Assembly: GCF_006345805.1 (NCBI RefSeq)
Contig: NC_043001.1
Location: 126,046,001 to 126,110,000 of the forward strand
Direction of reading: 5' to 3'
DNA: 64,000 nucleotides
From: Octopus sinensis
Lineage: Eukaryota
Positions 26,246 to 56,304 of the stretch are shown here, piece by piece. Under the pieces are notes generated by a model. That model ran no database searches. It saw only the letters and a program-made list of their open reading frames with translations, and was not told the DNA's origin. A program made the translations under genes and the position numbers. Numbering within the stretch: the first letter of the stretch is position 1; every line of letters begins with the position of its first letter.

Positions 26246-26321
26246 ATGATTCTACGGCTAAACAAAGTGATGTCGGAGCAGTTCCCTCAAGTTGCTACGA
26301 AAGTGAATTCTCTACAACCAG
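26246..26321 (+). CDS. ALPK1: ALPK1-like, probable coding exon 1 (MILRLNKVMSEQFPQVATKVNSLQP, phase 1)
   Basis: ATG in strong context (gcaccATG) with an in-frame TAG just upstream. Donor ccag|gtaaaa leaves phase 1, matching the next exon (G+AT = Asp). No recognisable homology in this exon, so it rests on splice logic. Confidence 0.55.
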
Positions 26322-27189
26322 GTAAAACTAAAATGGAAAATTTATTGTGTGTGTGTACATGCATGCATACTCTTTACTCTTTACTCTTTTACATGTTTCA
26401 GTCATTTGACTGCGGCCATGCTAGAGCACCGCCTTTAGTCAAGCAAATCGACCCTGGGATTTATTCTTTGTAAGCCCAGTACTTATTCCATCGGTCTCTT
26501 TTGCTGAACCGCTAAGTGACAGGGACGTAAACATACCAGCATCGGTTGTCAAGCAATGCTAGGGGGACAAACACAGACACACAAACACACACACACATAC
26601 ACACATACATATATATACATATATACGACAGCTTCTTTCAGTTTCCGTCTACCAAATCCACTCACAAGCCATTGGTCGGCCTGGGGCTATGGCAGAAGAC
26701 ACTTGCCCAAGATGCCACGCAGTGGGACTGAACCCGGAACCATGTGGTTGGTTAGCAAGCTACTTACCACACAGCCACTCCTGCGCCTATATATGTATGT
26801 TTCATCCTCTATATATGTATGTTTCATCCTCATCATCATCTTTATCACTTCCACCTCCAACATCATCATTGTCATCTTTGCTATAATCACTATTGCAACT
26901 ACCAAATTTGTCATCATCCTTTCCTTCATTACAAGTACCACAGGCAATCATCATTACCACCGACACCCCCAACCATCCATGAACACCATCACAACCACCC
27001 TACTACCTCCACCACCTCTACCACCGCCTTCACCACTGCCACCACCTCCACCACCACTGCCCACTGCCACATCTCCTCCTCTTCCTTATCATCACCATCC
27101 TTGTTGTTTTTTATCCTTGTCATCATCATCATCAATGTCATAATTGTCATGTTGTTAACAGCAGCATCACTGCTGTCTCTGCTGCTGAT

Positions 27190-27255
27190 GTGGCTATAAT
27201 CACCACCACCACCACCACCACCACAACAACAACAACAATAACAAGAAGCCTGTGC

Positions 27256-27290
<35 letters not shown>

Positions 27291-27341
27291 GCCGCTACAA
27301 CTACTACTACTACTACTACTACTACTGCTGCTGCCGCTACA

Positions 27342-27373
<32 letters not shown>

Positions 27374-27527
27374 TACTGCTGCTGCTGCTGCTGCTACTAC
27401 TACTACTACTACTACTACCACTACCACCACCACTACTACTGCTGCTGCTACTACTACTACTACTACCACTGCTGCTACTACTACTACTATTACCACCGCC
27501 ACTGCTGCTGCTACTACGACTACTACA

Positions 27528-27570
<43 letters not shown>

Positions 27571-27612
27571 TACTACTACTACTAATACTACTATTGCTAC
27601 TACTACTACTAT
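27190..27612. repeat. Long compound (CAC/CAA/CTA/CTG)n trinucleotide tract just upstream of exon 2
   Basis: About 420 bp of trinucleotide repeats; source of spurious poly-T/L/V ORFs. Confidence 0.95.
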
Positions 27613-27697
27613 GAATATTTTCCTTACCATCACCAACACCACTTTATCACAGCCACCATTATTCTTTCTTACCCTTATCACTTCATTTCCTCTTCAG

Positions 27698-27918
27698 ATG
27701 ATCTACCTGACAAGCTGAAATCTGCAGTCACTGAGGACAGAAACCGTGATCTGAATATAATGCAGGTGTCATTAGATCTTCTCTCAGAGAATCTCAAAAA
27801 ATATTTTGAAAATGCCTTACAACAACTTTGGCCCTTTATGCCACCAACCATTGTACCAGACATGATGTTTGAAAAGAACCCTTTCATCCCCAAACTGTGC
27901 CAAGCAGACCTTTTGTTG
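27698..27918 (+). CDS. ALPK1: ALPK1-like exon 2, start of N-terminal ADP-heptose-binding domain (...DLLSENLKKYFENALQQLWPFMPP...LLL)
   Basis: Acceptor cttcatttcctcttcag, donor ttg|gtgagt (phase 0). LSENLKKYFENALQQLWPFMP resembles human [21 protein letters not shown]. Confidence 0.85.
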
Positions 27919-28139
27919 GTGAGTCTGTCAGTGGTTTCTATAAGTTATTCTTCATTATTTACCATTTATTAAGACAATAAAGTAGCAGAATCATTAGCAC
28001 GCGTGGTAAAATGCTTGGCAGCATTTTGGGGTGTCGATAAAATAAGCACACTGGGGTCAATGTAAATGATTTATCCCCTGCCCTGAACTTGCTGGCCTTG
28101 TGCCAAAATTTGAAATCATCATCATCATTATTATTATCG

Positions 28140-28215
<76 letters not shown>

Positions 28216-29784
28216 ATTATTATTGTCCAACCCATGCTAGCATGGAAAGCGGACGCTAAATGATGATGATGATGATTATTATTATTATTATTATTATTAT
28301 GTGAGAGAGCAGTGCATGCCATCAAAGTGACACTGTATCCCTGTGGATTTCAAATCTATCCTTAGTGTTGTGAAACACATCTTGAAGCATTTCAGGGGTT
28401 GTCTCCTCCATTGCTAACTGAATGCGTTCTTTAAGTTCAGCTAAACAATAACTCCATCCTTGGATGAAGGTAGAGAAAATAATTGCAGCCAAATTGAAAA
28501 AAAAGCTGTCGTGGACTGATAAACAGGATCCAACTAGAATGAAAATAAAATTATAAAAAAAAATAAATAAAAATTATAAAATTATAAACAAAATAAGAAA
28601 TTTATGCACTTTTGACATGTATTAAACATCATCACCATCATCATCATCGTTTAAAGTCCGCTTTCCATGCTAGCATGGGTTGGACGATTTGACTGAGGAC
28701 TGGCGAACCAGGCTCCAATCTTGATTTGGCAGAGCTTCTACAGCTGGATGCCCTTCCTAACGCCAACCACTCCGAGAGTGTAGTGGGTGCTTTTATGTGC
28801 CACCGGCACAAGTGCCAGTCAGGAGGTACTGGCAACAGCCACGGAAAAATCGTGTTTTGTTTTTTTATGATAAACATAAATAAAAGTGAGATTTTTTAAA
28901 AAATAGTCCAATTTCACTGAAATAAATAGTTAATTCTGGTACACCCTGTATATTAAGTAGAACATTCTGAGGAAACTAATGGAGACCTATCTAAAACATC
29001 AGACTTTACCTCTTCTCAGGATTATGTTAAGGATAAATAAGTTTGTGGAATACTCTCTTTTACTCTTTTACTTGTTTCAGTCATTTGACTGCAGCCATGC
29101 TGGAGCACCGCCTTTAATCGAGCAACTCGACCCCGGGACTTATTCTTTTGTAAGCCCAGTACTTATTCTATCGGTCTCTTTTGCCGAACCGCTAAGTGAC
29201 GTGGACATAAACACACCAGCATCGGTTGTCAAGCAATGCTAGGGGGACAAACACAGACACACAAACACACACACGCATATATATATATATATATATACAT
29301 ATACACGACGGGCTTCTTTCAGTTTCCGTCTACCAAATCCGCTCACAAGGCTTTGGTCGGCCCGAGGCTCTAGTAGAAGACACTTGCCCAAGATGCCACG
29401 CAGTGGGACTGAACCCGTAACCATGTTGTTGGTAAACAAGCTACTTACCACACAGCCACTCCTGCGCCTACATAGTCACAAATTAATTAATTTGTTACTT
29501 AACTAGCTTGATTGGTTGAACATTTAAATTAATGTATACCTGTATTCACATGCTTGCACACACGTGCATATCTCACAAAAGCAAATATCATACTGTAACG
29601 ATATCTTTAAACGAGGGTTGAAGTCATAAATATTTATTTCTTACCTGGGGCTTTCAGCTATTTTACGCTATTGGATTGTGCAGTATTGGGGGACAAGAAT
29701 TGGGCCTTTTTGTTTTGTCTACAATTAAATGTCATTTTCCTATTTATTTTATTTTTTGTTTTTTCATTCAAACCAATTAACCAG

Positions 29785-30034
29785 ACTGCTTTGAATTATG
29801 CAATTGAATGCGGAGAGTTCCACTATGCTTCAGCCCTTGCATTTGTGGTCGATCGATTCATGTACTGGTATGGTGGTTCTAAGGTGTTGTTGAATATTAT
29901 TGATCACATATTGGTACTGAGTCCCTCAACAGTCATTGCTCCACAGTTAACCATCCGGCGTGCACGTATCATGAAGGATAATGGTAATCTCCATGGTGCC
30001 ATAGAAGTCCTTGATAGCCTTATTGATTCGAAAG
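29785..30034 (+). CDS. ALPK1: ALPK1-like exon 3 (TALNYAIECG...FVVDRFMYW...PSTVIAPQLTIRRARIMKDNG...DSKG)
   Basis: ccag|act acceptor (phase 0), aaag|gtaatg donor (phase 1). Close match to human FLVDRFLYG...[21 protein letters not shown]. Confidence 0.93.
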
Positions 30035-31769: not shown

Positions 31770-31871
31770 CTCTCAGTGAAGATGGCCAGTGGCACTACAG
31801 AACTGAGTTTCAGTATATGAATGTTTATGCAGTCTGTGTGCAAATCAAAGGACAGATTTATCGCAACTTAG
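31770..31871 (+). CDS. ALPK1: ALPK1-like exon 4 (ALSEDGQWHYRTEFQYMNVYAVCVQIKGQIYRNL)
   Basis: ttttccaacccag acceptor, ttag|gtaatg donor, phase 1/1. Matches human GTWLYRNE...VCIQIRGQILQKLG. Confidence 0.92.
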
Positions 31872-31892
31872 GTAATGAAGCATATATTTATG

Positions 31893-31944
<52 letters not shown>

Positions 31945-32960: not shown

Positions 32961-33594
32961 TTTCTCTCAAATTTTTTTCTCTTTTCTTTTTTTCATCTTT
33001 TAAAAGTGTTTACTCTTTTACTCTTTTACTTGTTTCAGTCATTTGACTGCGACCATGCTGGAGCACCGCCTTTAATCGAGCAAATCGACCTCGGGACTTA
33101 TTCTTTGTAAGCCCAGTACTTATTCTATCGGTCTCTTTTGCCGAACCGCTAAGTGACGGGGACATAAACACACCAGCATTGGTTGTCAAGCAATGCTAGG
33201 GGGACAAATACAGACACACAAACATACACACGCATATATATATATACATATATACGACAGGCTTCTTTCAGTTTCCATCTACCAAATCCACTCACAAGGC
33301 ATTGGTCGGCCCGGGGCTATAGCAGAAGACACTTGCCCTAGATGCCACACAGTGGGACTGAACCCGGAACCATGTGGTTGGTTAGCAAGCTACTTACCAC
33401 ACAGCCACTCCTGCGCCTATTTGGCCTGTTTATTTGTAAATAAAGTGATTCCTTTTCTGTTAGTATAAATACATAGATGAAAAATAGACAAATGAAATTA
33501 ACATAAAGATATAAATGACAATACAAAAAATACTAAAAGGGCTTGTTTGGCTATAAACTTCTAACTAGTGGAAGTCTGGTTTAAGCACTCCATA

Positions 33595-34687: not shown

Positions 34688-35308
34688 CCCTTTCGTTACC
34701 GTATTTATTTTGGGATACTCTTTACTCCTTTACTTGTTTCAGTCATTTGACAGCGGCTATGCTGGAGCACCGCCTTTAATTGAGCAACTCGACCCTGGGA
34801 CGTATTCTTTTGTAAGCCCAGTACTTATTCTATTGGTCTCTTTTGCTGAACTGCTAAGTAACGGGGGCATAAACACACCAGTATCGGTTGTCAAGCAATG
34901 CTAGGGGGACAAACACACACAAACATATATATATATATATACATATATACGACGGGCTTCTTTCAGTTTCCGTCTACCAGATCCACTCACAAGGCATTGG
35001 TCGGCCCGAGGCTATAGTAGAAGACACTTGCCCAAGGTGCCATGCAGTGGGACTGAACCCAGAACCATGTGGCTGGTAAACAAGCTACTTACCACACAGC
35101 CACTCCTGCGCCTATGTTCAGTGTTTCTTTCAATGAATTTTAAATATAACGAAGAATTTAGTAAGATAACTTGGTTATCATTCAGCCAGTGTTAGGAACA
35201 TAAATTGTAACTAAGGTTTGGTGGAAGATTTGAATTGAATACTTATGAAAACAAAACATTTGTACTACAGAGCCAGAGACGGTTTCGGTTGGGTTGGTAA
35301 TGAAAGGG
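34688..35308. mobile_element. piggyBac-type MITE family 2 (TTAA|CCCTTTCGTTACC...GGTAATGAAAGGG|TTAA) with SINE-B insertion
   Basis: TTAA on both sides. Relatives at 2668-2890, 25836-26055 and about 34320-34527. Confidence 0.85.
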
Positions 35309-35729: not shown

Positions 35730-35764
<35 letters not shown>

Positions 35765-36177: not shown

Positions 36178-36437
36178 GTTTGTGGAAAGAAGCTGTTCCT
36201 CTCTTGTTGAAATCTGTTGAAGAATTTGAGAAACTCCCTGATAAGGACTTGAAAGGCATATCATACTCTTATGGTTTGCTCTCTCATTGTTTGTGTAAGC
36301 TCAGCCATAAGGAGTATTTGGAACTTCAGAACATTTATGTATTTCAGAGAGACCATCCTTGCTATGAGGCATTTGAATATGGCATGAAAGCAGCTGAATT
36401 ATCACCAAAACAGAGTTTGTTTTTTGCAAGACATTGT
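36178..36437 (+). CDS. ALPK1: ALPK1-like exon 5 (GLWKEAVPLLLKS...LPDKDLKGISYSYGLL...QSLFFARHC)
   Basis: attttag|gt acceptor; tgt|gtaaat donor chosen for phase-0 compatibility. Matches human MWYEAAELIWAS...LPQPDKKGLSTSLGIL...TPLF. Confidence 0.9.
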
Positions 36438-37034: not shown

Positions 37035-37252
37035 CTCCAGTCAAGTGAAAGTCTGTTGATGTATGCAGTTCAGGTAACTGATTTGACTCAGCGGAAGAAA
37101 ATATTGGCTGATGTTATTCTGTATCTGCAAAAAGTTATTTTTGCAAACAACATTGCAGAAATTTCAAAGAGTAAGGAGCAATTGTTCATCTTTATAAAAG
37201 GAATTTATGTGATGGTTCTTGTCCTTGGCTGCTCCAATACATCTGCAGATCA
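37035..37252 (+). CDS. ALPK1: ALPK1-like exon 6 (LQSSESLLMYAVQ...SKSKEQLFIFIKGIY...SAD)
   Basis: ttcctatatttcag acceptor (phase 0), ca|gtaagt donor (phase 2). SKEQLFIFIKG resembles human GKQELHSFVKA. Confidence 0.85.
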
Positions 37253-38299: not shown

Positions 38300-39415
38300 G
38301 TTGCCCATGCTTACCAGTACTTTATTTTATCAACCCCAGAGGAATGAAAGACAAAGTTGACTTTAGCAGGAATTGAACTCAGAACATAAAGACTTGGAAA
38401 AAATACCACAAGGCATTTTTTTAATTGTTTAACAACAACAACAACGATAATGATTTCAAATTTTGGCACAAGGCCAGAGATTTTGGGGTAGGGGTTAAGT
38501 CAATTACATTGACCCTGTGTTCAACTGATACCTATTTTATTGACCCCGAAATGATGAAAGGTAAAGTTGACCTTGGTAGAATTTGGATACAGAATGTAAG
38601 AAAGATGAAATGTTGCTAAGCATTTTGCCTGACATGCTAATGATTCTGCCAGCTTGGTGGAATTTGAACTCAGAACATAGTGTGCTAGTGATTCTGCCAG
38701 CTTGCCGCCTTAATAATAATAATAATAATAATAATAACCCTTTCTACTATAGGTACAGGGCCTGAAGCTTGTGGGGATGGGGTTGTTGATTGCATCGACC
38801 CCAGTGCTCAACTGGTACTTGATTCATTGATCCCAAAAGGATGAAACGCAAAGTTGACCTCAGTGGAATTTAAACTCAGAATGTAACAGCAGATGAAATA
38901 CTGCTCAGCATTTTGCCTGGCATGCTAACAATTCTGCCAGCTCTCCACCTCAATAATAATCCTTTCTACTATAGGCACAAGGCCTGGAATTTGAAGGGAA
39001 GGGTGATGGTTGATCATATAGACCCCCAAGTACTTGACTGGCATGTAATTTATCAGCCCCAAAAGGATGAAAGGCAAAGTCAACCTCGGCAGAACTTAGA
39101 ACATAGTGATGGGTGTGATACTGGCTAAGCATTTCATCCAGTATGCTAACAATTCTGCTAGCTTGTTGCCTTAATAATGATAAGGACAATAATAATAATA
39201 ATCTTTTCTACTGGAGGTACAAGGCTTCAGATTTGTGGGGAGGGAACTATCGATTACATCGACCTCAGTGTTCAACTGGTATTTTGACCGTGAAAGGATG
39301 AAAGGCAAAGTCGACCTCAGTGGAATTTGAACTCAGAGCGATGGGTGAAATACTGCTAAGCATTTTGTCCAGTGTGCTAACAATTATGCCAGCTCACCGC
39401 CTTAACAACAACAAC
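38300..39415 (-). mobile_element. Cluster of about five decayed SINE-A variants with an alternative 3' tail, separated by (TAA)n
   Basis: Repeated blocks ccttttctactataggcacaaggcctg...ttgacctc...gaatttgaactcag...tctgccagct...ccgcctt-aataataat. Confidence 0.75.
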
Positions 39416-39440
39416 AACAATAATAATGATAATAATAATA

Positions 39441-39476
<36 letters not shown>

Positions 39477-39489
39477 TAATAATAATAAT

Positions 39490-42299: not shown

Positions 42300-44171
42300 G
42301 TATTTTGCTGATCATTTGGAGAAGGCTTGCCTCTACTTATACAAGAAATATTCTCTATTAGGAATCGATGGATTGGAAAGTAAAAGAGGTGGAGACATTT
42401 TCAAAGAGATGCTACCGGCAATTAAGTTTCTCTTCGTTACTCTTAAAGAACCAACCATAGAAAGACAAGCATATTTCATTACTAGTTTTAATTCTATGAA
42501 AACTTCTAAACCAGAAGAAATGGAAGACAGTATACGTAATGGTTGTAGTTTGAATAAAGAATATGAGAAGACAATGAAGGAACGAAATGAGAATTACAAA
42601 CAGTCTTCGTATGAAAGCAAGCCTGCTGCCACATTACAAAATAAGGATAGAAATTCAAAAGAGTCTGGGACAGTTTTAAGTGAAGAGAGGGTAAACAAGT
42701 GTATGGTAGACACTAATGTAGTAAGTGAGGTGAGACAGGACAGCTGTAGGATAGACTGCGATACAGTAACTAAAGAAAGGGGTCCTGAATGTATGGCAGA
42801 CCATAACGCAGTAACTAAAGAAAGGGATCCTGAATGTATGGCAGACCCTAATGCAGTAACTAAAGAAAGGGATCCTGAATGTATGGCAGACCCTAACGCA
42901 GTAACTAAAGAAAGGGATCCTGAATGTATGGCAGACCCTAATGCAGTAACTAAAGAAAGGGATCCTGAATGTATGGCAGACCCTAACGCAGTAACTAAAG
43001 AAAGGGATCCTGAATGTATGGCAGACCCTAATGCAGTAACTAAAGAAAGGGATCCTGATGTATGGCAGACCCTAACGCAGTAACTAAAGAAAGGGATCTG
43101 AATGTATGGCAGACCCTAATGCAGTAGTAACTAAAGAAAGGGATCTGAATGTATGGCAGACCCTAATGCAGTAACTAAAGAAAGGGGTCTGAATGTATGG
43201 CAGACCCTCACGCAGTAACTAAAGAAAGGGATCCTGAATGTATGGCAGACCCTAATGCAGTAACTAAAGAAAGGGATCCTGAATGTATGGCAGACCCTAA
43301 TGCAGTAACTAAAGAAAGGGGTCCTGAATGTATGGCAGACCCTAACGCAGTAACTAAAGAAAGGGATCCTGAATGTATGGCAGACCCTAATGCAGTAACT
43401 AAAGAAAGGGGCCCTGAATGTATGGCAGACCCTCATGCAGTAACTAAAGAAAGGGGTCTTGAATGTATGGCAGACCCTAATGCAGTAACTAAAGAAAGGG
43501 ATCCTGAATGTATGGCAGACCCTAATGCAGTAACTAAAGAAAGGGGCCCTGAATGTATGGCAGACCCTAACGCAGTAACTAAAGAAAGGGATCCTGAATG
43601 TTTGGCAGACCCTAATGCAGTAACTAAAGAAAGGGATCCTGAATGTATGGCAGACCGTAATGCAGTAATTCACAAAACAAAAGACAAATGTTCGGGAGAC
43701 AGCAATGTTTCTCATGCAAATGAAAAACAAGAACAAAATTATAAAGAAGAGTCAATAGAATCCAGCATTGAGTCTGGTTATGGCAGTTTAACTAATCCTT
43801 CACAAAATTCATCTGCTTACCTTCAGCCAAATCATTGTTCCTATAAGCAGCATTGCTTAAAACAGCGACCACAGCAAGATACGATACGTGCTTCTGCGTT
43901 GGAGAATTGTAGAAATGTTGGTTTGCATTCAGATCTGTCTATGAAAGATTTATCCAACATGTGTTTAGTTAACGTTAACTATTCGCTAGAGGAAGAAGAT
44001 GATGGAGTAGATGTTGAGGACAACAGTAATGATGGTGGTGATGGGACGGCCGGAGAAGATGTTAATGAAAAATATCAGGGGTCTGTGATTAACAGAAATG
44101 CTGAGAGAACATTACGTCATACTAGACAAGAACAATATAAAGAGAGGAAAACAATGAGACCGAAACTACTG
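42300..44171 (+). CDS. ALPK1: ALPK1-like exon 7, large exon: end of N-terminal domain plus low-complexity linker with 45-bp coding repeat; net -1 frameshift at 43057-43195 as assembled
   Basis: ttttatttattccag|g acceptor completes CA+G (phase 2). ORFs 42316-43083 and 43197-44300 carry the same repeat in different frames. Donor ctg|gtatgt at 44172 (phase 0) precedes a SINE. Confidence 0.8.
42775..43668 (+). repeat. Coding minisatellite, 20 x 45 bp (ERDPECMADPNAVTK)
   Basis: Unit gaaagggatcctgaatgtatggcagaccctaatgcagtaactaaa. Unit starts run from 42775 to 43629 (854 bp = 19x45 - 1). Confidence 0.97.
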
Positions 44172-44789
44172 GTATGTATGGAAATATATTCTTCTGAAAG
44201 AGTATACATTACATGTGATCACCGTGACCGACCAGGTTATCAGATGTTGCTACACATCGCTGGTCACAATGCGCTTTGCATTGTTTTAGCCTTCAAATGA
44301 CGCCACCCTGCTGGCTAAGCGAGCAGGCCAACAGAAGAAAGAGTGAGAGAAAGTTGTGGCGAAAGAGTACAGCAGGGATCGCCACCACTCCCTGCAGGAG
44401 CCTCGTGGAGCTTTAGGTGTTTTCGCTCACTAAGCACTCACAACGCCCGGTCTGGGAATCGAAACTGCGATCCTACGACCGTGAGTCCGCTGCCCTAACC
44501 ACTGGGCCATTGCGCCTCCATACATTACATGTACTAGAATTTATTTATTTATTTAAAGCTGTTCATTCACTCTGTTGGTACTCTGAATTTTTCAATTTAT
44601 GCATTTCACCAGGTAGCAACCCACACCGCCAATGTATGTATGTATAGTAATAATAACAATAATAATAATCCATGAATGTAATTCATAAATATTTTAATGC
44701 ATTGCTACGCACGTTTCCACAAATTATGTAGTGATGCATTAAGATAATTATAAATTCCATCCATGGATTATTGTTATTATTATTATTAA

Positions 44790-45456: not shown

Positions 45457-46374
45457 CAGTAGTTTTATTTTTATAGCGTGCTTTCAATTCACTACCGAGC
45501 GCAGCTCTGTGTGCCTTGGGTGTGTGCTGTGATTTGTTGTGATGCTCTGATGGTTATTGTATGGAAAGTGTTCTGTGTAGGATGTGTGCAGTGCCTAGTA
45601 GTGCAATTTTCTGTATGTTATATGTGTTTGTAAGTCCTGGTGTTTTTGTTATGTATTTGTCTGAATATTTTTTTATCATGCCTAATGCACCTACTATGAT
45701 AGGAATTGTTTCTGTTTTCAGATTCCACATTCTAGTTACCTCTATTTCCAGGTCTTTGTATTTTGAGAGTTTCTCCATTTCTTTTAGAGACACGTTGTCA
45801 TCTGCCGGTATTGATACATCAATTAGAAAGCATTTTTTTTCTTCATGGTCTCTGACAACTATATCTGGTCTGTTGGCCTTAATTTCTCTATCTGTGTGTA
45901 TCGGCATATCCTAGAGTATGGTTGCTTTCTCGTTTTCTGTGACCTTTTCTGGTGTGTGCCTATACCATCTTTTTTCTGTTGTTATTCCATAATGTTGGCA
46001 TAGCTTCCAATGTATGTAGGTTCCAACTCTGTCACGTCTGTGAATATATTCCTTCTTAGCCAGGACTGGGCAGCTAGAGATAATATGATTTATTGTTTCT
46101 TGTCCATCTCCACATATTCTGCAGTTACTTGTAATATTTCTTTTCATTACATGTTTTTGGTAATTTCTGGTGGGGAGGCTTTGGTCTTGTGCTGCAATTA
46201 AAAATCCCTCTGTTTCTGCTTTGAGTCCTGAGCTTCTCAACCATTGCTGGGATTTTTCTTTGTCTATTTCTTTTGCATTTAGTTTAGTCCAGTATTTACC
46301 ATGAAGGGGCTTTTCTTGCCATCGTTTTATCATGGTTCGTTGCTGTTCTATTTTTAGTTTGGATTTCATTTGTT
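45457..46374 (-). mobile_element. R4/Dong-clade non-LTR retrotransposon, 5'-truncated 3' end (CCHC knuckle plus restriction-like endonuclease)
   Basis: CRICG...TINHIISSCP zinc knuckle and RPDIVV...LIDVSIP...KLSKY endonuclease motif. One nonsense codon (TAG where the other copy has TGG). Flanked by (TAA)n. Confidence 0.9.
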
Positions 46375-47149
46375 TATTATTATTATTATTATTACTACTA
46401 CTACTACTTTATATATATCCTACATTGTATTGGCATAGCTCAGTGCAACCCCAAAAACCTGTTATTGACAGTTGGTATCATAAAACTGTAGCTGGCATAA
46501 TATAATAGGAACTTTTATATGCATATTCAACAATGTTTCCTGTAAGCAAACTGAAAGAATATATTTTTTTATGTTTGCTACCCTCACACGTTTTTGCCAG
46601 TATATACACATTGAAGCTTTACTATAGTATCATAAATGTATCTACTGCTATTTCCAGTAAACATAGGTGCTTTGTTGTACCACTACTCTATATTTATATT
46701 TCTATCTTTACAGTGCTTTATTTTACTGGAAATTAAAACATTTGTATTGTAATATTTTATTTTCCATTGAAAATTTTTTCACTGTTCTCAGTCTGTTAAT
46801 GGCTAAGCATTCAGACGAGTATACTGGCATTGATATAGGAACATTTGAAATATTGCCCAGGTAAATTCAGCTGATGAAGACTAATCAAATTTACGATGAC
46901 AAACGTATTTGAAGAGTCAGAAACCCAGGTACTGGATTATCCAATTCTGGGTTGTCCATTTATATAATGTTCTTCCTAGAGGTAAGACAAAATTTTTTTA
47001 TGTTTGCTGCCCTCACGCATCTTTGCCAGTATATACACAATACACATCGAAGCTTTACTATAGTGTCGTAAATGTATTGACTGCTATTTCCAGTAAACAT
47101 TGGTGCTTTGTTGTACCACTACTCTATATTTATACATATATTTATACAT

Positions 47150-47570
47150 ATTCTGAACGCCTTACTTCCCTGGGTATGGACACATTGAAACTCCGATGTC
47201 TGGCAGCTGACTTGGCAGACACTCATAATATTAACAACCATCTTACAAACAATAACTCTGAGCACCTTTTCAAACGCCACCCGTCTAACACCCGTGGACA
47301 TATTTACAAAGTCAGAAAACAGCACAGCTCCCATGACTTTAGGAAACATTTTTTCACACTGAGAGTTGCTGAAGCATGGAACAAACTGCCGGCATCAGTT
47401 GTTAGTTGTCGGAGCACTGCATCCTTCAAAACTTCCATGCTTTCTGAGATTCGCCAACACTACACCTGATTTTCTCTCCTCTATACACACACAAGCATGT
47501 ATCTGACTCATACATTGTTCGCTTTCCAGACATTTGTACATTACTGCATATACTTTATTTGCACTTGAAG
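47150..47570 (+). mobile_element. CR1-clade LINE 3' fragment, second copy
   Basis: YSERLTSLGMDTLKLR...NTRGH...RVAEAWNKLP; near-identical to the 60.8-61.3 kb copy. Confidence 0.9.
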
Positions 47571-49830: not shown

Positions 49831-50105
49831 TAAGTACAGGTGCAGGCATGGCTGTGTGGTAAGAAGTTTGCTTCTATTTACATAATATTGAGGTCTCTTT
49901 CTTTCTTTTGTTATCTTACCGTTTTATCAATATATATATATAGGCGCAGGAGTGGCTGTGTGGTAAGTAGCTTGCTAACCAACCACATGGTTCCGGGTTC
50001 AGTCCCACTGCGTGGCATCTTGGGTAAGTGTCTTCCGTTATAGCCTCAGGCCGACCAATGCCTTGTGAATGGATTTGGTAGACGGAAACTGAAAGAAGCC
50101 TGTCG

Positions 50106-50143
<38 letters not shown>

Positions 50144-50347
50144 ATATATGCCTCTGTGTGTTTGTGTGTCTGTGTTTGTCCCCGTCACTTAGCGGTTCGG
50201 CAAAAGAGGCCGATAGAATAAGTACTGGGCTTACAAAGAATAAGTCCCAGGGTCGATTTGCTCGACTAGAGGCGGTGCTCCAGCATGGCCGCAGTCAAAT
50301 GACTGAAACAAGTAAAAGAGTAAGAAAAAGAAAAAGAAAGTATATAT

Positions 50348-50437
<90 letters not shown>

Positions 50438-50648: not shown

Positions 50649-50844
50649 GTTTACCTGATTCTAGATGAGTCTATACTAACCTTCTTATATAATAATCAAG
50701 ATGACAGTATATTGACACAATTAACTTTGGATAACATTGGGAAGACTGACCTAACTCACGATGTACAAGATGGAGATCCTAATTTCAATTGGTCCGATGA
50801 TCAGTGTGATAATCTGGACAAGCAGATTATCAATCGACTTCAGA
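50649..50844 (+). CDS. ALPK1: ALPK1-like exon 8 (VYLILDESILTFLYNN...DKQIINRLQ)
   Basis: tttacttacag acceptor (phase 0), caga|gtaaat donor (phase 1). Open frame, phases join exons 7 and 9. Confidence 0.8.
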
Positions 50845-51790: not shown

Positions 51791-53631
51791 TGTCCTTGAG
51801 CAAAGTACTTCATTTCACATTGGTTTGGAAATATGCTGTGCTTGAGAAAACCCGGCAAGTTAAGTGAGATTGCATCTATGGTCTATGCCAGTGTCACATA
51901 ACCGGCCCTTTTAAAAGTTCCCTTCAATCGTTGAGCAATGTGCTGTGCTTGAGAAGACCTCTTGAGTCAAGTAAAATCACTATTGTGGCCAATGCCAGTA
52001 CTACCTGACTGCCACCTGTGTTGGTGGCATGTAAAAATCACCATTTGAGTGTATTAGGAAGGACATCAAGCTCTAGAAACCTTGCCAGATCAGATTGGGG
52101 CCTAGTGCAGCCTCTTGGCTTGCCACTCCTCAGTCAAACTGTCCAACCCATGTCAGCATGGAAAGTGGACGTTAAACGACAATGATGATGAGGATGATTA
52201 TTTAATAACAATTAAAGACTTGTAGGAACACAATATTTCGTTATGCAACTATAATATCTATTTCTTTATTACCCACAAGAGGCTAAACACAGAGGGGACA
52301 AACAAGGACAGACATAGGTATTAAGTCGATTACATCGACCCCAGTGCGTAATTGGTACTTAATTTATCGACCCCGAAAGGATGAAAGGCAAAGTCGACCT
52401 CGGCGGAATTTGAACTCAGAATGTAACGGCAGACGACATACCGCTAAGCATTTCACCCGGCGTGCTAACGTTTCTGCCAGCTCGCAACTATTATATACTA
52501 CAGAGTATATTAAACGTTTTTGTATAAGTCAGTACTGTTCTACTGTGTTAGCAGTGCTATTACATCACTTGTTAAGGTCATCTCTACAGATTTTCAATAA
52601 AAATTATAGCCAGCACTAATTTTGTTATAACATTTTATATCTGAAACGCTGCAACAAAGTCAGTGCTAGCTATAATTCCTATAGAAAATTCGTAGAGATG
52701 AACTTAACAAGTATTTGATAACAGTTTGATTTTGCTTGATACAACTTAATGTTTCATAGGCTTGTCATATGTCTGAAAAAAAAACACACTGTAAAAGTTT
52801 GAGCAGTAATGCATTAACATGAAGTTAAATATATGTTGGTCATAGAGTGATGAATGGTCTTGCATTGGCCACTCTACGAACAAACATGTTTTTAACTTCT
52901 TGTAAACATGCGCAGGAGTGGCTGTGTGGTAAGTAGCTTGTCTACCAACCACATGGTTCCGGGTTCAGTCCCACTGCATGGCACCTTGGGCAAGTGTCTT
53001 CTACTATAGCCTCGGGCCGACCAAAGCCTTGTGAGTGGATTTGGTAGACGGAAACTGAAAGAAGCCCGTTGTATATATGTATATATATATATGCGTGTGT
53101 GTGTTTGTGTGTCTGTGTTTGTCCCCTAGCATTGCTTGACAACCGATGCTGGTGTGTTTATGTCCCCGTTACTTAGCGGTTCGGCAAAAGAGACTGATAG
53201 AATAAGTACTGGGCTTACAAAAGAATAAGTCCCGGGGTCGAGTTGCTCGACTAAAGGTGGTGCTCCAGCATGGCCGCAGTCAAATGACTGAAACAAGTAT
53301 ACACACACACATACATATATACAACAGGCTTCTTTCAGTTTCTGTCTACCAAATTCACTCACAAGGCTTTGGTCGGCCCGAGGCTATAGTAGAAGACACT
53401 TGCCCAAGGTGCCACGCAGTGGGACTGAACCCGGAACCATGTGGTTGGTAAACAAGCTACTTACCACACAGCCACTCCTGCGCCTATATATATATATCAA
53501 TAATTTACAAAATAAGGGCAAAAGAAAAATTCTAATGCCAAATATGCCGCAAAAAAGGCAAAAATTGTCAATAACCATTATAATTTATGCGTCTCGAAAC
53601 AAACCGACAGAAATTTCTAAAAAATCCGTTA

Positions 53632-53692
53632 TTACCGTATTGGTCCCAATTTCGGGGTTAATTCATAAGAATTTTCCCCTCTTCAGCGATAA
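53632..53692 (-). ncRNA. Type I hammerhead ribozyme motif, antisense to the ALPK1 intron, intact stems
   Basis: Minus strand reads UUAUCG-CUGAAGA-GGGG...CCCC-GAAA-UUGGGACCAA-UA-CGGUAA: full core, AUA triplet, 6-bp stem I. Confidence 0.82.
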
Positions 53693-53775
53693 ATACGTGA
53701 GATATAAGTGAAATACTTACTCATACTTGCTTTTTCCATGGGTATGAGTAAGTATTTCACTTATATCTCACGTAT

Positions 53776-53836
53776 TTATCACTGAAGAGGGGAAAATTCT
53801 TATGAATTAACCCCGAAATTGGGACCAATACGGTAA
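53776..53836 (+). ncRNA. Type I hammerhead ribozyme motif, sense in the ALPK1 intron, stem I closing pair mutated
   Basis: Inverted copy of 53632-53692. CTGAAGA at 53782, GAAA at 53815. G>A at 53781 gives an A-C mismatch next to the core. Confidence 0.75.
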
Positions 53837-54372
53837 TAATGGATTTTTTAGAAATTTCTATCGGTTTGTTTCGAGACGCATAAATTATAATGGTTATTGA
53901 CAATTTTTGTCTTTTTTTCGACATATTTGGCATTAGAATTTTTCTTTTGCCCTTATTTTGTAAATTATTAATAAATTTAACCTTTAAAGGTATTTTTTGA
54001 TATGCTGGCCATTGATAAAAATTTTTTTCCCGGAAAAAAAAATTTTATATATATATATAACTTTATTCTTTGATTGATTTCAGTTACTGGACTGAAGCTA
54101 TGCAAATGGAGTGCAATAAACATCTTGGAGGTTGTTTATCAATTACTATTTGTTGAACCTGTTAAGTTATAAGACAATAAGGGAGATGATATAAGCAGTA
54201 ACATCATTTTTGTTGTTCTTTTAGACTAATATAGGCATAAACACAAACAAGAACATAGATCTATGCAAGCCATGATTTCTTTAACTCTGTCACCCTTTCA
54301 AATGTAAAATCTGTTTGAATAGATTAACATAGAGTAACTGTTCAAATACAATTCTTCTTTGCACCATTCTAG

Positions 54373-54526
54373 ATGCTGTTTTATACCACTACAATCCAGT
54401 GACATCTATGTGGTATATCCAAGACACGATAGTTTATATAAGTAAAGAGCTCTCTGTTGGCAAAAAAGGTGGCTTCCGAGATGTTTATGAAATGAACTTT
54501 CTGCATCAAGATGAACCACTTGGAAG
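54373..54526 (+). CDS. ALPK1: ALPK1-like exon 9, alpha-kinase N-lobe (NAVLYHYNPVTSMWYIQDTIVYISKELSVGKKGGFRDVYEMNFLHQDEPLG)
   Basis: Hand translation (absent from ORF track). ccattctag acceptor, gaag|gtttgt donor (phase 2). Matches human WTAQETIVYLG...[22 protein letters not shown]. Confidence 0.92.
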
Positions 54527-54576
54527 GTTTGTATTTATTTATTATCTGTTTATTTAATCTGTATTGGAGTATATAT

Positions 54577-54808
54577 TTCTTTACTGCCCAGAAGGGGTTA
54601 AAAACATAGAGGGGACAAACAAGGACAGACGAAGGGATTGAGTCGATTATATCACCCCCAGCGCGAAACTGGTATTTTATTTATTGACCCCGAAAGGATG
54701 AAAAGCAAAGTTGACCTCGGCGGAATTTTAACTCAGAATGTAATGACAGACGAAATACCGCTAAGCATTTTGCCCGGCGTGCTAACGTGTCTGCCAGCTC
54801 GCCGCCTT
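54577..54808 (-). mobile_element. SINE family A, immediately downstream of the tRNA-Leu copy
   Basis: Family A consensus; head starts about 13 nt after the tRNA 3' end on the same strand. Confidence 0.88.
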
Positions 54809-54820
54809 AAAAGCATCAAA

Positions 54821-54902
54821 TGGCAGTGGTGGGATTTGAACCCACGCCTCCGAAGAGACTGGTGCCTTAAACCAGCGCCTTAGACCGCTCGGCCACCCTA
54901 AG
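54821..54902 (-). pseudogene. tRNA-Leu(AAG) copy, probably a pseudogene
   Basis: D arm, anticodon stem CTGGT/ACCAG with loop TTAAGGC, and long variable arm are typical of eukaryotic tRNA-Leu(AAG). The acceptor stem has 3 mismatches (CTTAGGG vs CACTGCC) and the T-loop reads TTCAAAT. No encoded CCA. Confidence 0.8.
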
Positions 54903-55146
54903 TTCACCCCATTAATGGTCACTTGTTGCTTACATCCAGATTAATGAGATAGATGACCAAAGACCAAGCCAACTGAAATGTAATGTAGATATAAATATTA
55001 AAAAAATGTTTGTCTTGGGAAATGATGTTAACAGAATGTTGATAGACTAAAAAATTATAATCATCTGAGCAGGTGCTGAAAAGTTTCTGGTTTTGAGTAA
55101 AAGAAAATACAGGAGGATCAGTTATTTATGATTTTATTCAACATAT

Positions 55147-55562
55147 AGGTGCAGGAGTGGCTGTGTGGTAAGTAGCTTGTTTACCAACCATATGGTTCTG
55201 GGTTCAGTCCCACTGCGTGGCACCTTGGGCAAGTGTCTTCTGCTATAGCCCCGGGCCGACCAATGCCTTGTGAGTGGATTTGGTAGACGGAAACTGAAAG
55301 AAGCCTGTCGTATATATGTATATATATGTATGTGTGTGTATATGTTTGCGTGTCTGTGTTTGTCCCCCTAGCATTGCTTGACAACCGATGCTGGTGTGTT
55401 TACGTCGCTGTCACTTAGCGGTTCGGCAAAAGAGACCGATAGAATAAGTACTGGGCTTACAAAGAATAAGTCCCGGGGTCGATTTGCTCGACTAAAGGCG
55501 GTGCTCCAGCATGGCCGCAGTCAAATGACTGAAACAAGTAAAAGAGTAAAGAGTAAAAGAGT
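55147..55562 (+). mobile_element. tRNA-derived SINE family B, full length (internal TA/TG microsatellite, (AAAAGAGT)n-like tail)
   Basis: Head taggtgcaggagtggctgtgtggtaag...ggttcagtccc, CORE-like ttgggcaagtg block, tail gaaacaagtaaaagagtaaagagt. Confidence 0.9.
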
Positions 55563-55775
55563 ATATTCCCCTCTCAGATTCACATACTTATTGCAGTGGC
55601 CCATCAGTTTTTCTAAGGCCTGCAAAAGAACTGGGACGGTTGGGCCTCCAACCAGGCCTTTCACGACACCCTTAAAGCCATGAACTTCTCAGCATCCCCT
55701 TGTATTTACTAACTGTATTTTACTAATCAAACCTGTTTTTGTTTGCTTATGGGTGTATTTTGCGTTTCATTCTAG

Positions 55776-56304
55776 ATACATTTGCAAACGTTACCGAAAA
55801 GAGAAAGATCCACTTGATTATATTGATGATGTTAAATGCCAGATGGAAGCAGGCCTTTATGTGACATACTTCAATCAAGCTCTCAAATCTTACCAATCTG
55901 ATATTCGCATTCATTACCTCCCTGCTGCTTACATGCATCTATTGGATGCCAATGGAGATGTAGAGTTCTGGGTAAACATTGAACCATTTGTAGAGGGTGA
56001 ATTTCTGAAATTGACCAATAACTATGATTACTGTAATCCTAGAGGACGTGACATGTCAACAGCTTTTACTCACTTCACATATTTTAAGTCTGCTGGCAAA
56101 TTAATGGTTGTTGATCTACAAGGCTGGTTACCATGGGGTGTACAGAATATAATTTATCTCACAGATCCCCAGTTTCACACTGTTACAGGGGATAGCAGCA
56201 CATTTGATTTTGGAATTGATGGTTTCAAAGTTTTCTTTAATAAGGTTCACCCAAAATGCAATCATATTTGTGAAACACTTAAATTGGAGAGACCTGACTT
56301 TTGA
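55776..56304 (+). CDS. ALPK1: ALPK1-like exon 10, alpha-kinase catalytic domain to stop (YICK...EPFVEGEFLKLTNN...HFTY...VVDLQG...YLTDPQFH...DFGIDG...CNHIC)
   Basis: Alpha-kinase motifs intact: catalytic Lys in YICK, VVDLQG, TDPQ, xFGxxG, His/His/Cys/Cys zinc ligands. ttcattctag|a acceptor completes AG+A; TGA at 56302-56304. Confidence 0.96.

What the first reader, a model, noticed from the sequence alone, without database searches (positions are those of the whole stretch)
26246..56304. Complete ALPK1 orthologue (ADP-heptose receptor architecture) in an apparent octopus genome
Ten phase-compatible exons encode both the ALPK1-specific N-terminal domain and the alpha-kinase domain. In mammals ALPK1 senses the bacterial LPS precursor ADP-heptose and phosphorylates TIFA to activate TRAF6/NF-kB. 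Equivalents of ligand-contacting residues as recalled from human are present: F61 (WPF), R116 (29854), R150 (29956), R153 (29965), D231 (36246), K233 (36252), S236 and F295. This points to cytosolic nucleotide-sugar sensing in a lophotrochozoan, where I know of no characterised ligand or downstream partner.
Basis: partly seen in the sequence, partly recalled or inferred. Interest (0 to 1): 0.8.

Follow-up and report, generated by a model that had tools for sequence, protein, structure and literature searches.

The report
Octopus ALPK1 gene, linker frame broken
This stretch of Octopus sinensis DNA holds a true counterpart of ALPK1, the vertebrate sensor of bacterial ADP-heptose, with sugar pocket and kinase preserved, but as assembled its reading frame breaks in a repeat, and public databases already list the gene in pieces.

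Summary
The observation largely holds. Ten GT-AG exons on the + strand (26246-56304) encode an ALPK1-type N-terminal domain (NTD), a repeat-rich linker and an alpha-kinase domain (KD). Exons 1-7a reproduce Octopus sinensis RefSeq XP_029636967.1 ("alpha-protein kinase 1-like") exactly.

Orthology to ALPK1 is strong:
- The NTD matches only human ALPK1 in the PDB (E 3.6e-39; model TM about 0.7).
- The KD scores 168 bits against ALPK1 and 82 against eEF2K.
- Five intron positions and phases are shared exactly with fish, abalone and chiton ALPK1.

The gene is not "complete" as assembled. Four 1-bp deletions in the 45-bp repeat array of exon 7 give a net -1 frameshift and a stop at 43081-83, where the RefSeq model ends. 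I judge these to be probably assembly errors, but could not prove it. Octopus and cuttlefish annotations all keep NTD and KD as separate models.

Two sugar-side positions differ from vertebrates: T237 is Tyr in cephalopods and Q67 is Val.

Full-length "ALPK1-like" proteins are already listed for gastropods, a chiton, a nemertean, an annelid and amphioxus, although a 2024 paper says ALPK1 is vertebrate-only. Ligand and substrate remain untested.

The parts
26246..26321 (+). Exon 1 (start ATG at 26246; ends in phase 1)
   Evidence: Exact spliced match to XP_029636967.1. The donor GT is conserved in O. bimaculoides.
27698..27918 (+). Exon 2. It holds W70-P71-F72 (27829-27837); F72 corresponds to human F61. 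The intron after it is phase 0.
   Evidence: The intron position and phase are shared with chiton, abalone and fish ALPK1.
29785..30034 (+). Exon 3. It holds R123 (29854, human R116), R157 (29956, human R150) and R160 (29965, human R153).
   Evidence: R160 is invariant, and R123 and R157 nearly invariant, in the 31-sequence alignment.
31770..31871 (+). Exon 4 (ALSEDGQWHY...IYRN). The intron after it is phase 1.
   Evidence: The intron position and phase are shared with chiton, abalone and fish.
36178..36437 (+). Exon 5. It holds D240 (36246, human D231), K242 (36252, K233), S245 (36261, S236), Y246 (36264, at the position of human T237), Y263 (human Y254) and F298 (36420, F295). The intron after it is phase 0.
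   Evidence: The intron is shared with chiton, abalone and fish.
37035..37252 (+). Exon 6 (C-terminal half of the NTD). The intron after it is phase 2 and is found in octopus and cuttlefish but not in chiton, abalone or fish.
42300..44171 (+). Exon 7: end of the NTD plus a long linker. The proposed donor is CTG|GTATGT at 44171/44172, phase 0, with an alternative donor at 44201. The exon is entered in frame 1 and left in frame 3.
   Evidence: The donor is conserved in O. bimaculoides. The 167 codons after the repeats are stop-free, against 0 of 20000 shuffles. Indels relative to O. bimaculoides are 39, 174, 3 and 9 nt, all multiples of 3.
42764..43668 (+). 45-bp tandem repeat, about 20 copies, encoding 15-aa units (DPECMADPNAVTKER)
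   Evidence: TRF gives 20.1 copies and 94% matches. Unit-by-unit listing.
43051..43229 (+). Frameshift cluster: four consecutive repeat units of 44, 47, 44 and 44 nt (aa->a once, cc->c three times, plus one gta insertion). The net change is -1. The resulting in-frame stop is at 43081-43083, where the RefSeq model ends.
44217..44512 (.). 296-bp SINE insertion in intron 7, flanked by the duplication ACATTACATGT and absent from O. bimaculoides. It shows that sequence just after the exon 7 donor is non-coding.
50649..50844 (+). Exon 8 (last part of the linker). Acceptor is ttacag|GTT in phase 0; donor is CAGA|GTAAAT in phase 1.
   Evidence: A 12-nt in-frame indel relative to O. bimaculoides begins right after the acceptor. 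dN/dS is 0.13. The homologous cuttlefish exon is spliced to the tail of the large exon in model P0012.
54373..54526 (+). Exon 9 (N-terminal part of the kinase domain: AVLYHYNPV...DEPLG)
   Evidence: Both flanking introns (phase 1 and phase 2) sit at the same alignment columns as in chiton, abalone and fish ALPK1.
55776..56304 (+). Exon 10 (rest of the kinase domain; stop TGA at 56302-56304). It holds the catalytic Lys at 55786 (human K1067), Val at 55861 (V1092), the Asp of VVDLQGW at 56113, TDPQ at 56164-56172, and the Zn ligands His 56071, His 56248, Cys 56257 and Cys 56269.
   Evidence: Pfam Alpha_kinase 5.6e-35. Alignment to human ALPK1 KD 9j4p_A at E 1.7e-48. Coordinates. dN/dS of exons 9-10 is 0.064.

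Best explanation
This is the Octopus sinensis orthologue of ALPK1. It is one gene of ten coding exons, about 30 kb long. It would encode roughly 1290 residues: an all-helical N-terminal nucleotide-sugar-binding domain, a disordered linker carrying 15-aa repeats, and a C-terminal alpha-kinase domain.

The break in the reading frame (four 1-bp deletions in adjacent repeat units of exon 7) is most likely a consensus error of the assembly. That error made RefSeq truncate the model at 636 aa.

By homology, the NTD pocket (F72, R123, R157, R160, D240, K242, S245, F298) binds an ADP-heptose-like nucleotide sugar. Binding releases or activates the kinase domain held against the NTD. The kinase then phosphorylates an adaptor that feeds TRAF/NF-kB-type signalling.

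What is shown: orthology, architecture, conserved pocket and catalytic residues, and purifying selection on all parts. What is inferred: the exon 7 to exon 8 splice, the artefact status of the frameshifts, the ligand, the substrate and the immune role.
For: Identity:
- Exons 1-7a translate exactly to XP_029636967.1.
- An NTD profile hits only human ALPK1 in the PDB (E 3.6e-39).
- The AF2 model has pLDDT 87 and pTM 0.84. Its top 11 Foldseek PDB hits are all ALPK1 NTD, with TM 0.66-0.75; the next hits are generic TPR proteins at E >= 5e-3.
- The KD scores 168 bits against ALPK1, 82 against eEF2K and 52 against MHCK-A; in the last-exon search the TRPM7 kinase scored 29 bits.
- The catalytic Lys, DLQGW, TDPQ, Zn ligands and V1092 are all kept.

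Pocket:
- F61, R116, R150, R153, D231, K233, S236 and F295 are conserved.
- R153, D231 and K233 are invariant in 31 sequences.
- Divergent gastropod paralogues lack these residues, so their conservation here is not trivial.
- R153A and K233A abolish activation of human ALPK1 (PMC10723048).

Gene structure:
- Five intron positions and phases are identical in octopus, chiton, abalone and fish ALPK1, including both KD introns. A sixth lies within a few alignment columns in all four, and a seventh only in the three molluscs.

Selection (O. sinensis against O. bimaculoides):
- dN/dS is 0.23 for the NTD, 0.13 for exon 8 and 0.064 for the KD.

Single gene:
- Strand and order are the same as in full-length mollusc ALPK1. 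Donor, acceptor and phase 0 of intron 7 are conserved in O. bimaculoides.
- The cuttlefish model P0012 splices the tail of the large exon to the exon 8 homologue, also in phase 0.
- 40 of 44 long NTD-bearing proteins carry Alpha_kinase.

Artefact reading of the frameshift:
- The deletions are single bases in two-base runs, in four adjacent units, while the other 15 units listed are exactly 45 nt.
- The downstream frame is open (0 of 20000 shuffles).
- All indels relative to O. bimaculoides are multiples of 3, and dN/dS is the same upstream and downstream of the repeats, 0.66 and 0.63.
- The same array has an N-gap in the O. bimaculoides assembly and a small-indel frameshift in the cuttlefish assembly.
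Against: - As assembled there is an in-frame stop at 43081-83 and the exon lengths sum to 2 mod 3.
- No reads were available to check the four deletions.
- RefSeq or GenBank models in three cephalopods never join the NTD and the KD. O. sinensis has an NTD model only. O. bimaculoides has an 808-aa NTD model reading into intron 7 plus a separate 302-aa 'alpha-protein kinase 1'. The cuttlefish has a KD-side model only.
- No database protein spans exons 7-8 of an octopus.
- Intron 7 lies inside what is a single exon in chiton, abalone and fish, so it has no outgroup support.
- Pocket differences: T237 is Tyr in cephalopods and Q67 is Val.
- No TIFA homologue was found outside tetrapods, although the search was insensitive. 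A published survey reports TIFA as limited to vertebrates and reports heptose-nucleotide biosynthetic enzymes in Mollusca (PMC11573728). Both complicate a simple non-self ADP-heptose model.
Confidence: 0.6

Rival explanations
1. The frameshifts are real in O. sinensis. The gene then makes a 636-aa NTD-plus-partial-linker protein that ends inside the repeats. The kinase exons would be untranslated from that mRNA, which would be a recent loss or a truncating allele.
For: The sequence as given has the stop. The RefSeq models X1 and X2 both end there and are not flagged as corrected. Three of the four deletions are the same change (cc->c) in neighbouring units, which gene conversion within an array could spread.
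Against: The frame downstream is intact: 167 non-repeat codons, 0 of 20000 shuffles stop-free. Exons 8-10 have no defect, and the KD dN/dS is 0.064. Indels relative to O. bimaculoides are all multiples of 3, and dN/dS is equal on both sides of the repeats. The cc->c deletion occurs in two different unit variants (gat-ctg and ggt-ctg), which argues against simple copying. The same array is gapped or frameshifted in two other cephalopod assemblies. A loss would have to be very recent.
Confidence: 0.15
2. Cephalopod ALPK1 works as two polypeptides. An NTD-linker transcript ends in intron 7, and a kinase transcript starts in intron 7 at the ATG just upstream of exon 8. The two products associate non-covalently.
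For: All O. bimaculoides NTD models read through the exon 7 donor, and a separate 302-aa kinase model starts MFVYLQ|VY.... Intron 7 is cephalopod-specific and lies inside the ancestral single linker exon. Human ALPK1[1-473] and ALPK1[959-1244] co-expressed as separate proteins form an ADP-heptose-dependent complex (PMC10723048), so a split would be viable.
Against: The 'start' of the kinase model is the polypyrimidine tract plus CAG of a canonical acceptor. The read-through tail of the O. bimaculoides models is not conserved, because O. sinensis has a SINE there. Donor, acceptor and phase 0 are conserved, and in-frame indels begin exactly at the acceptor. The cuttlefish model does splice the large-exon tail to the exon 8 homologue. 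The O. bimaculoides locus has N-gaps next to exon 8 and in the array that could have broken the model.
Confidence: 0.15
3. The gene is intact, but the ligand is not ADP-heptose. The cephalopod pocket has drifted to another nucleotide sugar or an endogenous nucleotide (for example ADP-ribose or UDP-mannose), or the protein has a non-immune role.
For: T237 hydrogen-bonds a sugar hydroxyl, and T237M makes human ALPK1 respond to UDP-mannose, ADP-ribose and cADPR (PMC10723048). Octopus and cuttlefish have Tyr at this position and other molluscs have Ser. Q67 is conserved from annelid to mammals but is V, T, K or L in molluscs. Heptose-nucleotide biosynthetic enzymes are reported in Mollusca (PMC11573728), which would make ADP-heptose a poor non-self signal if octopus has them.
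Against: All the phosphate- and adenine-side contacts and D231 are kept. Tyr retains a hydroxyl. Nothing here measures binding. That Q67 is a ligand contact is my recollection, not a tool result.
Confidence: 0.3

Closest known systems
Human/vertebrate ALPK1 (PDB 5Z2C NTD with ADP-heptose; 8ZD3 and 9J4P NTD plus KD)
   Same: The domain order is the same: helical NTD, long disordered linker in one very large exon, then the alpha-kinase domain. The NTD fold matches (TM about 0.7). Eight pocket residues, Y254, the catalytic Lys, the Zn site and V1092 are conserved. Five intron positions and phases are identical.
   Different: Identity is only about 25% in the NTD. T237 is Tyr and Q67 is Val. The linker carries a 15-aa tandem repeat. 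There are two extra introns (6 and 7) inside the ancestral large exon, and two vertebrate KD introns are absent. The reading frame is broken in this assembly. Ligand and substrate are untested.
Annotated invertebrate 'alpha-protein kinase 1(-like)' proteins: Haliotis XP_067652821.1, Patella XP_050398493.2, Littorina, Liolophura XP_064598888.1, Lineus XP_064621268.1, Branchiostoma CAH1246664.1, Owenia
   Same: These are the closest relatives (E 1e-135 to 1e-57 against the NTD profile). The pocket residues are the same, and the exon sizes match (octopus 221/250/102/260 against chiton 224/262/93/263).
   Different: Those models are single NTD-plus-KD proteins of 860-1305 aa. The cephalopod gene has introns 6 and 7, a repeat array and Tyr at position 237, and it is annotated only in pieces.
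Other alpha-kinases (eEF2K, MHCK-A, TRPM6/7, ALPK2/3)
   Same: They share the Pfam Alpha_kinase catalytic fold and Zn site.
   Different: Scores are much lower: eEF2K 82 bits, MHCK-A 52 and, in the last-exon search, TRPM7 29, against 168 for ALPK1. None of them has the ALPK1 NTD. ALPK1 intron positions are reported to differ from those of ALPK2/3 and TRPM6/7 (PMC13143021).

Membership tests
ALPK1 (alpha-protein kinase 1) | C-terminal alpha-kinase domain with the catalytic Lys, catalytic and metal-binding Asp, and the Zn-binding His/Cys residues | tested here: met
   Pfam PF02816 at 5.6e-35. Alignment to human ALPK1 KD shows K1067, VVDLQGW, TDPQ, H...H-x2-C-x3-C and V1092 all kept.
ALPK1 (alpha-protein kinase 1) | Kinase domain closer to ALPK1 than to other alpha-kinases | tested here: met
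   PDB phmmer gives ALPK1 at 1.7e-48 (168 bits), eEF2K at 4.2e-22 and MHCK-A at 7e-13; the last-exon search gives TRPM7 at 7.5e-6. ALPK2 and ALPK3 have no sequence in the libraries I could query, so they were not tested directly.
ALPK1 (alpha-protein kinase 1) | N-terminal all-helical domain homologous to the ADP-heptose-binding domain of human ALPK1 (residues 1-446) | tested here: met
   Single sequence E 3.2e-17 and two-sequence profile E 3.6e-39, with ALPK1 the only significant PDB match. The AF2 model has pLDDT 87, and its top 11 Foldseek hits are all ALPK1 NTD with TM 0.66-0.75.
F72, R123, R157, R160, D240, K242, S245 and F298 align to these positions, and three of them are invariant. Exceptions: T237 is Tyr246 and Q67 is Val78.
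ALPK1 (alpha-protein kinase 1) | NTD and kinase domain in one polypeptide | tested here: inconclusive
   Order, strand and splice phases fit, and the cuttlefish model supports the exon 7 to exon 8 splice. Against this, the assembled exon 7 has a net -1 frameshift and a stop, and no octopus model or database protein joins the two domains. The feature is met in other molluscs.
ALPK1 (alpha-protein kinase 1) | Orthologous gene structure (shared intron positions and phases) | tested here: met
   Exact spliced alignments of Arapaima, Haliotis and Liolophura ALPK1 show five introns at identical alignment columns and phases. A sixth is within a few columns in all four species and a seventh only in the three molluscs. 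A large linker exon ends at the same KD position.
ALPK1 (alpha-protein kinase 1) | Binds ADP-heptose (or CDP-/UDP-heptose) and is activated by it | not testable with these tools
   This needs a biochemical assay. Only the conservation of pocket residues is available.
ALPK1-TIFA pathway | A TIFA-type FHA adaptor as the substrate in the same organism | tested here: inconclusive
   Human TIFA (the sequence was checked against 4YM4 and 6L9U) retrieved only tetrapod TIFA in the word-indexed search. No octopus proteome is searchable here. PMC11573728 reports TIFA as limited to vertebrates.

The most novel reading that the evidence does not exclude
ALPK1-type nucleotide-sugar sensing predates vertebrates and was present in the bilaterian ancestor. 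In cephalopods the receptor has been retuned: Tyr replaces the heptose-contacting Thr237 and Gln67 is lost, so it may sense a different nucleotide sugar, possibly an endogenous one. It may also act as two separately made halves (NTD and kinase) that assemble non-covalently. This would overturn the published view that ALPK1 arose in vertebrates after deuterostomes lost heptose synthesis.
Probability: 0.2. Interest if true: 0.7.

Novelty: new member of a known kind. Interest (0 to 1): 0.45.

Why it matters
A recent paper on NDP-heptose sensing states that ALPK1 and TIFA homologues occur only in vertebrates and builds an evolutionary scenario on that (PMC11573728). My full-text searches found no paper on invertebrate ALPK1 function.

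The octopus locus, together with full-length relatives in gastropods, a chiton, a nemertean, an annelid and amphioxus, shows three things. The NTD-plus-kinase architecture, the phosphate- and adenine-binding residues, and even the intron positions are older than vertebrates.

That makes one question directly testable with recombinant proteins: was cytosolic heptose-nucleotide sensing an ancestral bilaterian immune function? It also raises the question of what the kinase phosphorylates where no TIFA is known.

The value of this particular locus is limited. The gene is already labelled ALPK1(-like) in RefSeq, in pieces. The octopus copy is a poor exemplar because of the frame break. Nothing functional is shown.

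Tried and rejected
- **Pfam on single N-terminal exons.** This gave nothing, because there is no Pfam model for the ALPK1 NTD. I used PDB sequence and fold searches instead.
- **TIFA in octopus.** The word-indexed search with human TIFA returned only tetrapods.
- **O. vulgaris locus.** Protein P0002 is not on record for contig look-up. It is also a chimeric model (NTD exons 1-5 joined to a membrane protein that is not in the window), so it could not be used to check the repeat array.
- **A database protein or transcript spanning exons 7-8.** Two searches found none.
- **Zhou et al. 2018.** The primary source for the contact list is not held. Only R153, K233 and T237 are documented, from PMC10723048.
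- **A formal tree with ALPK2 and ALPK3.** Not possible, because no such sequences were retrievable. I relied on the NTD, score gaps and intron positions.
- **A cryptic intron inside the repeats as a rescue of the frame.** Each unit contains GTATGG...GCAG. A splice from the GT in a unit before the cluster to the AG in a unit after it would restore the frame. There is no evidence for such a splice, so I do not propose it.
- **tRNA scan of the window.** It found none.

Full report
**What is in the sequence**

The window is AT-rich, SINE-laden animal DNA. On the + strand between 26246 and 56304 I find ten exons with GT-AG borders. An exact spliced alignment shows that 26246-26321, 27698-27918, 29785-30034, 31770-31871, 36178-36437, 37035-37252 and 42300-43083 translate residue for residue into RefSeq XP_029636967.1. 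That protein is 'alpha-protein kinase 1-like isoform X1 [Octopus sinensis]', 636 aa. The window is therefore O. sinensis, or DNA identical to it at this locus. Three further exons (50649-50844, 54373-54526, 55776-56304) join in compatible phases (0 in, then 1, then 2). They give a 292-aa open frame ending at TGA 56302-56304.

**The two domains**

The last exon alone hits Pfam Alpha_kinase at 5.6e-35. Exons 8-10 align to the human ALPK1 kinase domain (9j4p_A) at 1.7e-48 (168 bits). The comparison values are 4e-22 for eEF2K and 7e-13 for MHCK-A; in the search with the last exon alone the TRPM7 kinase reached only 7.5e-6. Several key residues are present:
- the catalytic Lys (human K1067; codon 55786);
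- VVDLQGW and TDPQ;
- the His/His/Cys/Cys zinc site;
- V1092.

The N-terminal exons have no Pfam family. They match human ALPK1 NTD chains (5z2c, 8zd3, also present in 9j4p) at 3.2e-17. A two-sequence profile (octopus plus a gastropod transcript) reaches 3.6e-39, and nothing else in the PDB matches significantly. An AlphaFold2 model built on a 31-sequence alignment is confident (pLDDT 87.1, pTM 0.84) and all-helical. Its top eleven Foldseek matches in the PDB are all human ALPK1 NTD chains (TM 0.66-0.75, E about 1e-14). Generic TPR proteins follow only at E >= 5e-3.

**The ligand pocket**

A marmot ALPK1 aligns to the human crystal sequence without gaps over residues 1-456, so it gives human numbering. 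In a 41-sequence NTD alignment the octopus residues correspond as follows:

| Octopus | Human |
|---|---|
| F72 | F61 |
| R123 | R116 |
| R157 | R150 |
| R160 | R153 |
| D240 | D231 |
| K242 | K233 |
| S245 | S236 |
| F298 | F295 |

R153, D231 and K233 are invariant and F61, R116 and R150 nearly invariant across 31 ALPK1-type sequences. Divergent gastropod paralogues lack them, so the conservation carries information. R153A and K233A abolish ADP-heptose activation of human ALPK1 (PMC10723048).

There are two differences. T237 hydrogen-bonds a hydroxyl of the sugar, and its T237M mutation lets human ALPK1 respond to host nucleotide sugars (PMC10723048). It is Tyr in O. sinensis, O. bimaculoides and cuttlefish, and Ser in other molluscs. 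Q67 is conserved from annelid to mammals but is Val in octopus and T, K or L in other molluscs.

Exon 7 carries a 45-bp tandem repeat of about 20 copies (42764-43668). Of the units listed one by one, fifteen are exactly 45 nt. Four consecutive units (43051-43229) are 44, 47, 44 and 44 nt: one aa->a deletion, three cc->c deletions, and one gta insertion. The net change is -1. Frame 1 runs into TGA at 43081-43083, which is exactly where the RefSeq protein stops (...DPDVWQTLTQ*). The rest of the exon reads in frame 3. The ten exons sum to 3878 nt, which is 2 mod 3. 'Ten phase-compatible exons' and 'complete' are therefore not true of the sequence as given.

**Is the frameshift real?**

I could not look at reads. 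The indirect evidence favours an assembly error.
- The 167 non-repeat codons after the array are stop-free in frame 3, against 0 of 20000 shuffles. The other two frames have 9 and 19 stops.
- Relative to O. bimaculoides, all exon 7 indels are multiples of three (39, 174, 3 and 9 nt). dN/dS is the same upstream (0.66) and downstream (0.63) of the array.
- Exons 8-10 are intact.
- The cc->c deletion occurs in two different unit variants, which argues against simple copying.
- The same linker array is an N-gap in the O. bimaculoides assembly (28305-28480 of L001). In the cuttlefish assembly it carries a cluster of small indels in base runs with a net shift of -1. That assembly also has a frameshift at an A-run in its exon 5.

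I put the artefact reading at roughly two in three.

**Is it one gene?**

No octopus annotation says so. O. bimaculoides has an 808-aa NTD model that reads through the exon 7 donor into the intron. It also has a separate 302-aa 'alpha-protein kinase 1' beginning MFVYLQ|VY.... No protein in the 5.8-billion-sequence collection spans octopus exons 7-8.

Several points argue for a single gene.
- The 'start' of the kinase model is the polypyrimidine tract and CAG of a textbook acceptor.
- A 12-nt in-frame indel between the two octopuses begins immediately after that acceptor.
- The donor CTG|GTATGT and phase 0 are conserved.
- The read-through tail of the O. bimaculoides models is not conserved. 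O. sinensis has a 296-bp SINE with a target-site duplication 45 bp past the donor.
- In the cuttlefish Acanthosepion pharaonis the locus has the same order and strand. The deposited model P0012 splices the last 30 nt of the large linker exon (donor CAG|gtaagt, phase 0) to the exon 8 homologue (208 nt), then to a 160-nt exon and the last exon.

All parts are under purifying selection between the two octopuses: dN/dS is 0.23 for the NTD, 0.13 for exon 8 and 0.064 for the kinase exons.

**Orthology from gene structure**

I derived exact exon maps for ALPK1 of a fish (Arapaima), an abalone (Haliotis asinina) and a chiton (Liolophura sinensis). Five introns sit at identical alignment columns and phases in all four species: three in the NTD and both octopus kinase-domain introns. 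A sixth lies within a few columns, in the same phase, in all four. A seventh does so only in the three molluscs. In the three comparators a single exon of 1.1-2.0 kb runs from the middle of the NTD to the start of the kinase domain. Octopus and cuttlefish have two extra introns (6 and 7) inside it. Exon 8 is thus the 3' end of the ancestral linker exon, not the first exon of an unrelated gene. It also means intron 7 has no outgroup support.

**Distribution and prior knowledge**

A profile of the NTD finds only 187 proteins among 1.84 billion cluster representatives. The long hits whose names I looked up are mostly called 'alpha-protein kinase 1(-like)' or ALPK1; a few are labelled hypothetical, uncharacterized or unnamed. 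They come from Haliotis, Patella, Littorina, Batillaria, Babylonia, Nucella, Liolophura, the nemertean Lineus, the annelid Owenia, Branchiostoma, fishes and mammals. Forty of 44 long hits carry Alpha_kinase. The architecture is therefore bilaterian and is already in public annotation.

The literature I could search has nothing on invertebrate ALPK1 function. One recent paper states that ALPK1 and TIFA homologues occur only in vertebrates, and that heptose-nucleotide biosynthetic enzymes occur in protostomes including Mollusca (PMC11573728). [quoted passage not shown]

**Most likely mechanism**

By homology, the NTD binds an ADP-heptose-like nucleotide sugar through the Arg/Lys cluster, the two Phe residues and Asp240. 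This activates the kinase domain docked on it. The kinase then phosphorylates an adaptor upstream of TRAF/NF-kB-type signalling.

Shown here: orthology, architecture, the pocket, the catalytic residues and selective constraint. Inferred: the exon 7 to exon 8 splice, an intact reading frame, the ligand, the substrate and the immune role.

Rivals:
- a real, recent truncation in O. sinensis (about 0.15);
- a two-polypeptide ALPK1 (about 0.15), which is viable because the human NTD and KD reconstitute when co-expressed separately (PMC10723048);
- a shifted ligand specificity because of Tyr246 and Val78 (about 0.3). This one concerns the ligand only and is compatible with an intact gene.

**Verdict**

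This is a genuine ALPK1 orthologue with a conserved pocket. It is a new, incompletely annotated member of a known family. It is of moderate interest because it contradicts a published 'vertebrate-only' statement and makes the ancestry of heptose sensing testable. It is not functionally characterised, not unique to octopus, and not an intact open reading frame in this assembly.

Noticed in passing
window 42764-43668; L005 (cuttlefish) about 8300-9700; L001 (O. bimaculoides) 28305-28480: The ALPK1 linker carries a coding tandem repeat in cephalopods. Octopus has 15-aa units (DPECMADPNAVTKER); cuttlefish has 20-aa units (SKVDCEAETKERLSSPGEKT). In all three assemblies the array is damaged: a frameshift cluster, a small-indel frameshift, and an N-gap respectively. 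RefSeq isoforms differ in the number of units.
   Followed up: partly
L005 7994-9900 (- strand): The 531-aa 'gene' called on the opposite strand in the cuttlefish record lies over the repeat array of the ALPK1 linker exon. Long antisense reading frames run through the array there, so this is very likely an annotation artefact.
   Followed up: partly
proteins P0196, P0199, P0206 (metagenome/Logan contigs): Three NB-ARC/STAND NTPase plus TPR proteins from metagenomes match the ALPK1 NTD profile over about 210-235 residues at E 2e-19 to 3e-17. This hints that the ALPK1 sensor domain is related to the TPR sensor arms of prokaryote-type STAND proteins.
   Followed up: no
proteins P0162 (Batillaria) and P0183 (Pomacea LOC112576796): Gastropods have second, divergent NTD-bearing alpha-kinase paralogues in which nearly all ligand-contact residues are replaced (for example D231 to N or S, and K233 to Q or M). 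They may be ligand-blind or differently tuned copies.
   Followed up: no
protein P0002 (O. vulgaris, 495 aa): The O. vulgaris model joins ALPK1 NTD exons 1-5 (skipping exon 4) to about 230 residues of a multi-pass membrane protein that is not encoded in this window. This is a chimeric gene model.
   Followed up: partly
window 26375-26777, 29045-29458, 33011-33407, 34715-35102, 40401-40860, 49953-50323, 52919-53299, 55158-55555 and others: A SINE-like element of about 400 bp gives about 18 full or partial matches in both orientations across the 64 kb, many of them in ALPK1 introns. It produces the recurring pseudo-ORFs (…GLNPEPCGW).
   Followed up: partly
window 44217-44512, 41606-41900, 20829-21118, 19399-19581: There is a second SINE family of about 296 bp. 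The copy at 44217-44512 is a lineage-specific insertion with an 11-bp target-site duplication just downstream of the exon 7 donor.
   Followed up: yes
window 23853-24815 (- strand): A mariner/Mos1-type transposase remnant lies 1.4 kb upstream of the ALPK1 start codon. It hits Pfam Transposase_1 at 2e-20 and HTH_48 weakly, and is split over two ORFs.
   Followed up: partly
window 45554-46369 (- strand); also 46909-47469 (+), 60661-61164 (+), 39320-39916 (+): Intron 7 holds an ORF with a reverse-transcriptase zinc-binding motif (zf-RVT, 7.9e-7), probably a non-LTR retrotransposon remnant. The neighbouring ORF and the ORFs at the other listed positions, some in other introns and downstream, had no Pfam hit and look like similar repeat remnants. 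They largely explain why intron 7 is 6.5 kb here and about 2.2 kb in O. bimaculoides.
   Followed up: partly
window 26800-27620: Intron 1 holds a long, strand-asymmetric low-complexity tract (GC skew -0.37 over 26001-28000) that includes a trinucleotide microsatellite of about 400 bp.
   Followed up: no
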